In this document: positions 6,001-9,000 of the stretch, one piece after another
How the letters are laid out: every line of letters begins with the position of its first letter
Position numbering within the stretch: the stretch's first letter is position 1
DNA from: Podarcis melisellensis
Lineage: Eukaryota
Reading direction: 5' to 3' (one strand)
Length of the DNA stretch: 64,000 bases
NCBI GenBank assembly: GCA_964234715.1
Contig: OZ174275.1
Translations under genes and position numbers: made by a program
The notes under the pieces: model-generated
Told to the model about the DNA's origin: nothing
What the model saw: only the letters and a program-made list of their open reading frames with translations
Databases searched by the model: none

Positions 6001-9000
6001 AATAGTCCTAGTTTCATGAATCTATTACAATGCATCAGTGTTCCAATCAGTCCTCTTAGCCCAGGCAGGCAAGCAGCTGCAGGATGCACTTTTTCATCCT
6101 TCAGATCCCACCTTAAAACCCACCTTTTTCATGAAGCCCTTGGTTTAAGATCCCCAGCTGAAACAAATGCTAACTGCATTTGCTCACATGCATTCCTAAT
6201 CCACCTCTTACAACACTGCCTTCTCACCTGCCAATGTTTAGACTAAAGCTTCTTGAGACTGGGCCTTTTTTTTTTTTTTTGCTTATGAAATCCTGCAATG
6301 GGTGGTGCTGTGTAAGTACTATTATATCACATGTAGAGGAATGATGTAAAAGGTGTCATAATAAAAGTGTCAGGTTTACAGAGAAGCAGCCATGGATGTG
6401 ACACAGCTTCTGACATGTTCCACAAGCACTCTGGTGCTCACACCATTTTCACTGCGGATTAAATGAGTCAGCTGTGCATCTGATGTGCAACCAAACCACA
6501 TTTCTTGTGCTAGTGCAGACAGATCCTTAGCCTCACTGACAAGACTGGGGCAAGCTCTGCTCAGGGCAGAAGCATCTCTCATCCCATTCTACAAAAGAGC
6601 CCCCCAACTCCACCCCGGAGACTGCATAGTTCAGCATGCTACTTACTTGTCTGCAGACTCCGGGGTCCCCGTCCGCCCTCTGTTTGTGTTTTAACCCCGA
6701 ACCGGCCCTTTGCTAGAGGAAATGGACACAGCACTTAAAAAGGCAGCAGGGCGGAGACAGCCAACCACAAAGTCACAGCCTAGTGTCCTCCTTGTTTGTA
6801 AAAGGCTCTCTGAAAGCACAGGAGCCACCCATGACTTCTTCATATGCCCTTCCCCCAAGATCATGCTTCCTAAAGTCCAAGAAGCCAGACTATTTAAGAT
6901 GCTTACTCAGACATCCAACTAGCTGAACCCATTTGAGAGCATCAGTTTCAGAACTGATGCATTGGGGCCCAAAGCAATGTCTAGTGGAGACATGGGGAAG
7001 AGTCCCTTACACATTTGTGCCCACCTAGGTGAAATTAGATGTGACTTTCCTATAAGTCACCCTCATGAGCTCCCCAAATCCCCTTCCCATGAACCTTTAA
7101 GCATGTGTCCGCACAAGTGCAATATTGTGAGTTGGTTTAACATCTGAGCCATATGACTTGCCCTGTGCCTTGGAGCAGGGCTGCATGCTGGTATGCAAGC
7201 TTAATGGTGGCATCCAGGCAGCAGAACAGCACAATCAATGATATGACTGCAGGGCTGGTATCTTGTTGCACCATTCCTACTTGCAACCTTGGCTTCCTCT
7301 TTCTATTGCAGAGGGTGCAAGAGCTGTCTTACATTCCATGGCCCCTGGGCACCATTTTCAGCAATAAACCTTCCAATCCTGCCCATATCTCCTTATTGGG
7401 AACCATGAAGCAAGTGATCTCTCTTACTTGGTGTTTGCAAAGGCCTTATTTGTGGAAAGGAGAAAATGAGGATGCAGAAAGCCAGGGAGGAGTTGGATAG
7501 TGGGGTCTGCAGATGGAAAAGGGGCAGCAGCAAGGGGTGCTGTGGAATCAGGGACAGTTTGGTACCAGTGTCAAGAATTCCCCATCAAGTCAAGTCAAGA
7601 GCTGTAGGTGCTCAGAGTTAGGAGAACAATGTCCTGCAAGGGAAAGGGAGAAAAGAGGGACTTACTCTAACAATGATGCGCTCCGAGATGTGAGCAGCCA
7701 GAGTGTAGTTCTGGCTCTGGGCATGAGCTTGCAAGGCCACAACCAGCATGAAGTACCTGAAAACAAAACAAAGTGGGTTGAAGATAAATGCAAAATTTAA
7801 TGCACTCCTAATCATAACTCGACATGATGATAATTTATTTTTTAAAAAAAATCAGTAAAAAATAAACATATTATAAATTAATTACAAACTTAATCTGATG
7901 TATTGCATTCCAACAACAATATTACATTCATTGCCTTTCTTCTGTTAAAAAAAAATAAAATAATTTTAGGCCTAGCAGCTAAAATAAATGATGGCCTATA
8001 CATTTCTTTTGTTCAGCATATGCAGCATCTAAACCACGCAGGCACAGTGCAAAGATAACCTTTCAGGATCTAGAAAGACTTATGCATAGAATTAAGAAAA
8101 ACATAATCAGCTGGTGATCTGTTTTAATTTTTGTGTGTATTATATAGGGTTGCCATATGTCCAGAATTTCCCAGACATAGCCGTGTCCGGATTTTCACTT
8201 TTTGAAATATGGCAACCCTAGTATTAAAGGTGTTGTAAATTGCTTTGATTTTTTTATGAAATTATACATATAACTATATAAATAAAGGACTTTCAATGGT
8301 GACAATATTTTGCAGCAAGTTTTACCCACCATTTTTTATTCTGCTATTTTATTAATGCAAGAATGTTCACATTGCAGGGCAGCACACACATTTATTAGTT
8401 AGTTAGTTAGTTAACTTTAATTACATATTTCTTTTTGGGGGGTGGAGGAGACAGGTAGCACACAGCCCCTACCTCTGATCGGGATTGGGCTTGCCCTTCT
8501 TCCTCATGTTATTGGCTGTTGTCTCACTGAAGTGCAACCGTCCCACAGTGACCTTTGTAACCTGCTCCGGAGGCAAATTGACCCTGGAAAAAAAGGAAAA
8601 ATAAAAAAAGAATAAATGACGTTCTGCACGTGTCAAAGAGAAAGCATATTCTTTTACCTGGATGGGACCAACCAAAGTGTGTAAAATTGAGGACTCAAGG
8701 GATGCATGGTGGGGAGGAAATCTGCATTCAGGCGAAGTGTCTAAGCGCACCTAAACTCCCAGGGACATCAGTGGCACAAGAACAGAGCTAAGCACTTAAA
8801 TCCCCACCCATTTCAATGAGGCACCGCTGTGCTGCTCCTGGTTGGGAAGCTTCAGGTGCATTCAGGTGGCAACACACTAAAAAAGGAGAGGTAGTGCAAG
8901 AAAGCAACACCGCCTGTAGGAAGAAGAGCCTCTTCCAGTTACGATGCACCAGCAGAAGTCAGATTAATGCGCAGGAGCCGCCATGTCCAAGCTACCCTAT

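What the first reader, a model, noticed from the sequence alone, without database searches (positions are those of the whole stretch)
6647..6712. Hidden in-frame 66-nt cassette exon inserting 22 aa at the C-terminal end of the MYRF DNA-binding domain
Seen: on the minus strand in intron 11 (phase 0), a pyrimidine-rich acceptor (...ctgcctttttaagtgctgtgtccatttcctctag) is followed by 66 nt reading [22 protein letters not shown] with no stop, then a consensus donor CAA|gtaagt. A GCATG (RBFOX-type core) lies just downstream of the donor. The exon carries five CpGs in a CpG-poor intron, which suggests constraint. Established: the junction falls within ERIIVR|ASNPGQF, the conserved C-terminal strand/loop of Ndt80-family DNA-binding domains, about 56 aa upstream of the ICA cleavage site, and MYRF N-terminal fragments act as homotrimers. 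Inference: inclusion would give a still-cleavable isoform with altered or lost DNA binding that could poison or retune trimers. This would be a splicing switch absent from the canonical human protein as I recall it.
Basis: partly seen in the sequence, partly recalled or inferred. Interest (0 to 1): 0.8.

Follow-up and report, generated by a model that had tools for sequence, protein, structure and literature searches.

The report
Conserved optional reptile MYRF exon
Lizards, snakes and turtles keep an optional 66-base exon in the myelin master-regulator gene MYRF that adds 22 residues at the end of its DNA-binding domain; databases already list the isoform, birds and crocodilians appear to have lost it, and no study of it was found.

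Summary
The exon is real. Window 6712-6647 (minus strand) is a 66-nt, frame-preserving cassette between MYRF exons 11 and 12. The same 22 residues, nearly unchanged, occur in annotated isoforms of 10 squamate and 8 turtle species; nine species have isoform pairs differing only by this insert. None of the crocodilian, bird or marsupial proteins listed carry it, and three archosaur loci hold decayed remnants. The exon with its flanks (about 200 nt) is 95-97% identical to skink and rattlesnake, more than any constitutive exon. New here: a 55-nt hairpin encloses the 5' splice site (z -5.5), is kept in squamates and is lost in archosaurs. The insert falls right after the last beta-strand, where a structural alignment places the Ndt80 325-334 tail, so it swaps that invariant tail for a basic one while core, stalk and cleavage site stay intact. 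Altered DNA binding is inferred, not shown. The RBFOX motif is not conserved. Four same-species RNA runs had no MYRF reads, so splicing was not tested directly. It is not hidden (automated annotation has it), but I found no paper on it, and the scan has not reported it on other DNA.

The parts
6647..6712 (-). 66-nt in-frame cassette exon (22 aa; 5 basic, 2 acidic residues)
   Evidence: same peptide in annotated isoforms of 18 reptile species; 64/66 and 63/66 nt identical to Lerista and Crotalus
6713..6798 (-). Ultraconserved upstream intron: pyrimidine tract, acceptor, candidate branch point at -27, four YGCY motifs
   Evidence: upstream 60 nt 100% (Lerista) and 98% (Crotalus) identical versus 52-73% for nine constitutive exons; motif scan
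6612..6666 (-). Predicted RNA hairpin: 14-bp stem between the exon's 3' end and the downstream intron, with the 5' splice site in its partly paired loop
   Evidence: -28.9 kcal/mol, z -5.55; snake -29.2, z -5.92; archosaur remnants about -10, z about -0.4; most stable 55-nt window of the intron, next best -20.9; covariation not significant
6610..6646 (-). Donor GTAAGT and conserved downstream intron (3' arm of the hairpin); includes the GCATG at 6639-6635, which is not conserved in the snake
   Evidence: downstream 30 nt 100% / 90% identical versus 47-77% for constitutive exons
7666..7756 (-). MYRF exon 11, ends in the last beta-strand of the DNA-binding domain (ERIIVR)
   Evidence: matches PDB 5H5P, 5ZHU, 5YHU; strand 182-185 in both models
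3316..3516 (-). MYRF exon 12: invariant ASNPGQF tail, triple beta-helix stalk and auto-cleavage site
   Evidence: matches PDB 7DC3 and 5YHU; invariant columns in 55 animal sequences; PMC8326128, PMC5436001

Best explanation
A regulated, frame-preserving cassette exon, at least as old as the lizard-turtle common ancestor, kept in squamates and turtles and lost in archosaurs. Shown: exon, frame, conservation, both isoforms in public annotation. Inferred: inclusion is held partial by a hairpin that encloses the 5' splice site and by factors binding the invariant upstream intron. Inferred: the longer protein still trimerises through the stalk and self-cleaves, and its beta-sandwich folds normally; but the invariant tail that follows the last strand is pushed 22 residues away and replaced by a flexible basic segment whose second residue is Arg at the position matching Ndt80 residue 326. 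The isoform therefore changes MYRF's DNA affinity, specificity or tolerated site spacing, alone or in mixed trimers, much as exon 5a does for PAX6.
For: Insert in 10 squamate and 8 turtle species, 19-22 of 22 residues identical, never an indel. Twelve isoform pairs in nine species differ only by it. The block is 97% / 95% identical over about 200 nt, above all constitutive exons at 85-95%. Third codon positions differ at 2/22 versus 21/67 and 18/67 in exon 12 (p 0.05 and 0.14). Hairpin statistics; the snake's one stem change is C-G to U-G. Structural alignment: model residue 186 (first after the junction) pairs with Ndt80 325 in two apo structures, and 195 with 334 in DNA-bound 1MNN and 2ETW. 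Core strands are the same in both AlphaFold models; the tail has pLDDT above 50 up to residue 191 without the insert and below 50 with it. Cleavage does not need the DNA-binding-domain trimer (PMC5473870); the bridge region drives trimerisation (PMC5436001).
Against: No junction reads were seen: all four same-species RNA runs had zero reads even on constitutive exons, so there was no test. No functional data. That Ndt80 residue 326 is a base-reading arginine is from my memory; the papers were not held. The register comes from range ends, not a residue-level alignment. Residues after 532 are disordered in DNA-free MYRF crystals (PMC5473870), so the tail may be a plain linker. Hairpin covariation is not above shuffles (four distinct sequences). 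Near-invariant DNA forces a near-invariant peptide, so protein-level selection is not separately shown: among squamates I saw two synonymous and two non-synonymous changes. Models are monomers without DNA.
Confidence: 0.55

Rival explanations
1. Real cassette exon, but the peptide is a spacer or docking site in the linker between DNA-binding domain and stalk. It changes geometry, partner binding, modification or nuclear import rather than base contacts.
For: Ordered density ends at residue 532 and the stalk construct starts at 539 (PMC5473870). The insert is predicted as coil. Dictyostelium MrfA has a long disordered stretch here (PMC5473870). Small inserts of 3-6 residues occur at this junction in four distant proteins. 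It has a basic cluster like MYRF's short NLSs (PMC3742443).
Against: The tail after the junction is invariant in 55 animal MYRF-family sequences, unlike a passive linker, and aligns with a stretch of Ndt80 reached in the DNA-bound structures.
Confidence: 0.22
2. The isoform is an attenuator: it folds and joins trimers but binds DNA poorly, lowering MYRF output in some tissues.
For: MYRF works only as a trimer and one bad subunit can be dominant negative (G435R, PMC8094900). The invariant tail is displaced.
Against: Three of four tested domain mutants are tolerated as one copy per trimer (PMC8094900). A simple off switch would not need a fixed 22-residue sequence; the core fold is unchanged in the model.
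Confidence: 0.12
3. Selection acts on the nucleic acid (an RNA structure or an intronic enhancer); the exon is a tolerated by-product and the peptide has no role.
For: Intron flanks and third positions are as conserved as first and second positions. The exon's 3' half is a hairpin arm. All amino-acid changes fall in the first half.
Against: Conservation is centred on the two splice sites. Length and frame are fixed across squamates and turtles. In archosaurs frame, CpGs and hairpin decay together.
Confidence: 0.09
4. Not spliced at a meaningful level; the annotated isoforms were propagated by homology between gene models.
For: No reads seen here; all isoform records are computational predictions; some species' listed models lack it (Carettochelys, Elgaria).
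Against: Both isoforms appear in many separately annotated genomes and in a UniProt-only record (Pelusios); intact splice sites and frame for over 250 million years (divergence time from my own knowledge).
Confidence: 0.03

Closest known systems
RefSeq/UniProt predicted MYRF isoforms of squamates and turtles (e.g. XP_077177287.1 Paroedura picta X1, XP_061465804.1 Rhineura floridana X1, XP_042332851.1 Sceloporus undulatus X1, XP_067397602.1 Emydura macquarii X1)
   Same: The same exon at the same junction; the Paroedura peptide is identical to the window's.
   Different: Automated predictions with no description, tissue pattern or function; my paper searches found nothing on it.
PAX6(5a) and similar in-frame inserts in DNA-binding domains (WT1 +KTS, PAX3/7 Q+/Q-); from my own knowledge
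   Same: A short, conserved, frame-preserving splice insert within or at the edge of a DNA-binding domain.
   Different: Those have shown effects on DNA binding. Here it is only inferred, the fold is an Ndt80-type Ig domain in an obligate trimer, and the exon is limited to some reptiles.
Conserved alternative cassette exons with conserved flanking introns and low synonymous rate (general class; own knowledge)
   Same: Short, length divisible by three, flanks and third positions more conserved than in constitutive exons.
   Different: Nothing in kind; the degree (100% over 60-70 nt to a skink) is at the high end.
Stem-loops at 5' splice sites, e.g. MAPT exon 10 (PMC9236610 and PMC11228892 came up; details from own knowledge)
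   Same: Exon end pairs with the adjacent intron around the donor and could limit U1 access.
   Different: Here the donor sits in a 25-nt, partly paired loop above a 14-bp stem; predicted only, with no probing and no significant covariation.

Membership tests
Conserved alternative cassette exon | Canonical acceptor and donor, conserved in other species | tested here: met
   identical AG and GTAAGT in Lerista and Crotalus
Conserved alternative cassette exon | Frame-preserving, no stop, length conserved | tested here: met
   66 nt / 22 aa in all 18 species plus two genomic loci
Conserved alternative cassette exon | Both inclusion and skipping forms on record | tested here: met
   12 isoform pairs in 9 species differ only by the insert; these are annotation records, not reads
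Conserved alternative cassette exon | Junction reads in this species | tested here: inconclusive
   0 reads on any MYRF exon in 4 runs
Conserved alternative cassette exon | Flanking introns more conserved than around constitutive exons | tested here: met
PAX6(5a)-like DNA-binding switch exon | Insert lies in a DNA-recognition element of the domain | tested here: inconclusive
   inside Pfam PF05224 and aligned to Ndt80 325-334; the DNA-contact role of that stretch is from memory
PAX6(5a)-like DNA-binding switch exon | Isoforms differ in DNA-binding specificity or affinity | not testable with these tools
   needs EMSA, SELEX or ChIP
RBFOX-regulated exon | Conserved (U)GCAUG downstream of the exon | tested here: not met
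   AGCATG in window and Lerista, no GCATG in Crotalus; motif common in the intron
Poison (NMD) exon | Introduces a stop codon or frameshift | tested here: not met
   open frame in squamates and turtles; only the L003 remnant (46 nt) has a stop
Splice-site-overlapping microRNA or known structured RNA | Long (about 33-35 bp) continuous stem, or an Rfam match | tested here: not met
   14-bp stem plus a weak inner helix and broken outer pairing; no Rfam match at the exon
Exonised transposable element | Similarity to a repeat family | not testable with these tools
   no repeat library; single copy in the window and in each locus

The most novel reading that the evidence does not exclude
A hairpin-gated splicing switch that replaces the DNA-reading C-terminal tail of MYRF with an Ndt80-like arginine-bearing basic tail, giving lizards, snakes and turtles a second MYRF DNA specificity and mixed trimers with graded site preference. 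It would be a natural tool for the open question of how a trimeric MYRF reads its three-unit motif.
Probability: 0.25. Interest if true: 0.78.

Novelty: new member of a known kind. Interest (0 to 1): 0.52.

Why it matters
MYRF is dosage-sensitive and needed for myelin, eye, heart and urogenital development, and its DNA-binding domain is almost invariant across animals. How the trimer engages its three-part DNA motif is unresolved (PMC5473870, PMC5436001). A naturally evolved, long-conserved insert at the end of that domain would test whether the invariant tail reads DNA and how the domain-stalk distance sets site spacing. The clean pattern of retention in squamates and turtles with decay in archosaurs also gives a dated case of loss of an alternative exon, with its RNA structure decaying alongside. 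It has no direct bearing on mammals unless a counterpart is found there.

Tried and rejected
Word search with the exon plus intron read-through found nothing: too short, and candidates are limited by length. The 120 best homologues were ranked against an insert-free query and so are biased against the insert; only the cluster listings are a fair test. Turtle, crocodilian, gecko, iguanian and marsupial DNA could not be fetched (gene range or file too large). RBFOX: rejected. MicroRNA or Rfam family: rejected. A second stem between upstream intron and exon: not significant and weaker in the other species. QKI motif absent; four YGCY (MBNL-type) motifs upstream against 1.2 expected is a post-hoc lead among 11 motifs only. 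Ndt80 primary papers not held. No human contig was fetched or compared, so a human remnant was not looked for; human MYRF appears only as PDB chains returned by the tools. The N run at 28017-28149 was left alone.

Full report
Observation. Between exon 11 (7756-7666) and exon 12 (3516-3316) lies the reported segment, 6712-6647: acceptor after a pyrimidine tract, 22 open codons, donor GTAAGT, phase 0 on both sides, five CpGs against at most three in any other 66-nt window of the intron. On signals alone this is not compelling: a Markov null gives such a pseudo-exon in 24% of intron-sized sequences.

It is a real exon. Cluster listings of public MYRF proteins show the same 22 residues at the same junction in 10 squamate species (gecko, iguanian, amphisbaenian, vipers, colubroids) and 8 turtle species of both suborders, with 19-22 identities and no indel. 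In nine species, isoform pairs are identical once the insert is removed. These are computational annotations; that such alternative models usually rest on RNA-seq is my own knowledge. None of the 15 crocodilian, 60 bird or 28 junction-spanning marsupial proteins listed has the insert, nor do the mouse and hamster entries. My direct test failed for lack of signal: four same-species RNA runs had no reads on any MYRF exon.

DNA-level constraint. Against Lerista (L004) and Crotalus (L005) the exon is 64/66 and 63/66 identical. The upstream 60 nt are 100% and 98% identical, and the downstream 30 nt 100% and 90%; nine constitutive exons give 52-73% and 47-77%. The 200-nt block is the best-conserved stretch between exons 8 and 16 (97% and 95%). 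Third positions differ at 2/22 against 21/67 and 18/67 in exon 12 (Fisher p 0.05 and 0.14). This is the usual signature of a regulated alternative exon. It also means the peptide's conservation is partly a consequence of nucleotide constraint.

Loss in archosaurs. Three archosaur loci have recognisable remnants at the matching place. L003, an archosaur by its exon-12 signature (shared by crocodilians, palaeognaths and a few other birds), keeps both splice-site dinucleotides but has lost 20 nt, is out of frame, has a stop, and has lost all five CpGs, four as plain TG or CA. L002, a bird-type locus, keeps the donor with a rearranged body. L001 (Calcarius) has lost the donor. Because turtles are the sister group of archosaurs (own knowledge), the exon was present in the common ancestor of living reptiles and birds. 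Whether it is older and was lost in mammals could not be tested.

A hairpin around the donor. The last 20 nt of the exon pair with intron positions +21 to +35, forming a 14-bp stem with one mismatch; the donor sits in a 25-nt, partly paired loop. Energy is -28.9 kcal/mol, z -5.55; I chose that window after seeing the fold, so I scanned the whole intron as control: it is the most stable of 878 windows, the next unrelated one being -20.9, and other donors give about -2 to -12. It is identical in Lerista and kept in Crotalus through a U-G pair, with the inner helix extended over the donor; it is gone in the two archosaur remnants folded. Tight conservation of the downstream intron ends near the end of the stem. 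Covariation is not above shuffles with four distinct sequences, so the structure is predicted, not proven. The GCATG is not conserved in the snake and is common in this intron, so RBFOX control is not supported.

Protein consequence. The junction is R530|A531 in mouse numbering. Ordered density of the mouse domain ends at 532 (PMC5473870) and the stalk construct begins at 539 (PMC8326128). AlphaFold monomer models of the gecko isoforms have the same core strands; the insert is low-confidence coil, and the invariant tail drops from above 50 to below 50 pLDDT. The insert interrupts the Pfam Ndt80 match at position 172 of 180, and the seven residues after the junction are invariant in 55 animal sequences. 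Structural alignment of the short-isoform model puts the first residue after the junction on Ndt80 325, and reaches 334 in the DNA-bound entries 1MNN and 2ETW. From memory, Ndt80 Arg326 reads a guanine in the major groove; I could not get the papers. Short MYRF has Ser at that position and the long isoform has Arg, followed by a basic cluster. Stalk and cleavage sequences are unchanged, the bridge region drives trimerisation (PMC5436001) and cleavage does not depend on the domain trimer (PMC5473870), so a cleavable, trimer-forming isoform is expected.

Mechanism and odds. A real alternative exon: about 0.95. The full model of structure-limited inclusion giving a DNA-binding-retuned isoform: 0.55. 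Rivals: spacer or docking role 0.22, attenuator 0.12, nucleic-acid-level selection only 0.09, not spliced 0.03.

Comparison and novelty. It belongs to the known class of conserved frame-preserving cassette exons and probably works like PAX6 exon 5a, though that defining functional feature is untested. It is not a poison exon, RBFOX target by motif, microRNA or Rfam RNA. The hairpin, the archosaur loss and the Ndt80 register are what this follow-up adds.

Limits set by the operators. No human contig was saved or compared. The N run was not filled. The large protein search was used once, because the claim rested on relatives and the word search could not reach full-length proteins.

Noticed in passing
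window 12305-12580 (intron 7): Non-coding block 83% identical over 276 nt to Crotalus (L005:576-847); candidate enhancer or shared old repeat.
   Followed up: no
window 6418-6538 and 4126-4234 (intron 11): Two further moderately conserved non-coding blocks, about 83% identical to Lerista; the first also aligns to Crotalus.
   Followed up: no
proteins P0142, P0179, P0232, P0250: Unrelated 3-6 residue inserts at the same MYRF junction in a cyprinoid fish and three unnamed distant proteins; likely alternative splice sites or gene-model slips.
   Followed up: no
L003:52-97: The archosaur remnant keeps both splice-site dinucleotides but is 46 nt with a stop; if still spliced it would act as a poison exon.
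   Followed up: partly
L002:1942-2007: In the bird-type locus another AG 66 nt upstream of the kept donor gives an open frame with a mostly different peptide; no listed bird protein has it.
   Followed up: partly
L001:7745-7935: Long six-base purine-rich microsatellite in the Calcarius MYRF intron 11.
   Followed up: no
window 28017-28149: Run of 133 N in intron 3; left as it is.
   Followed up: no
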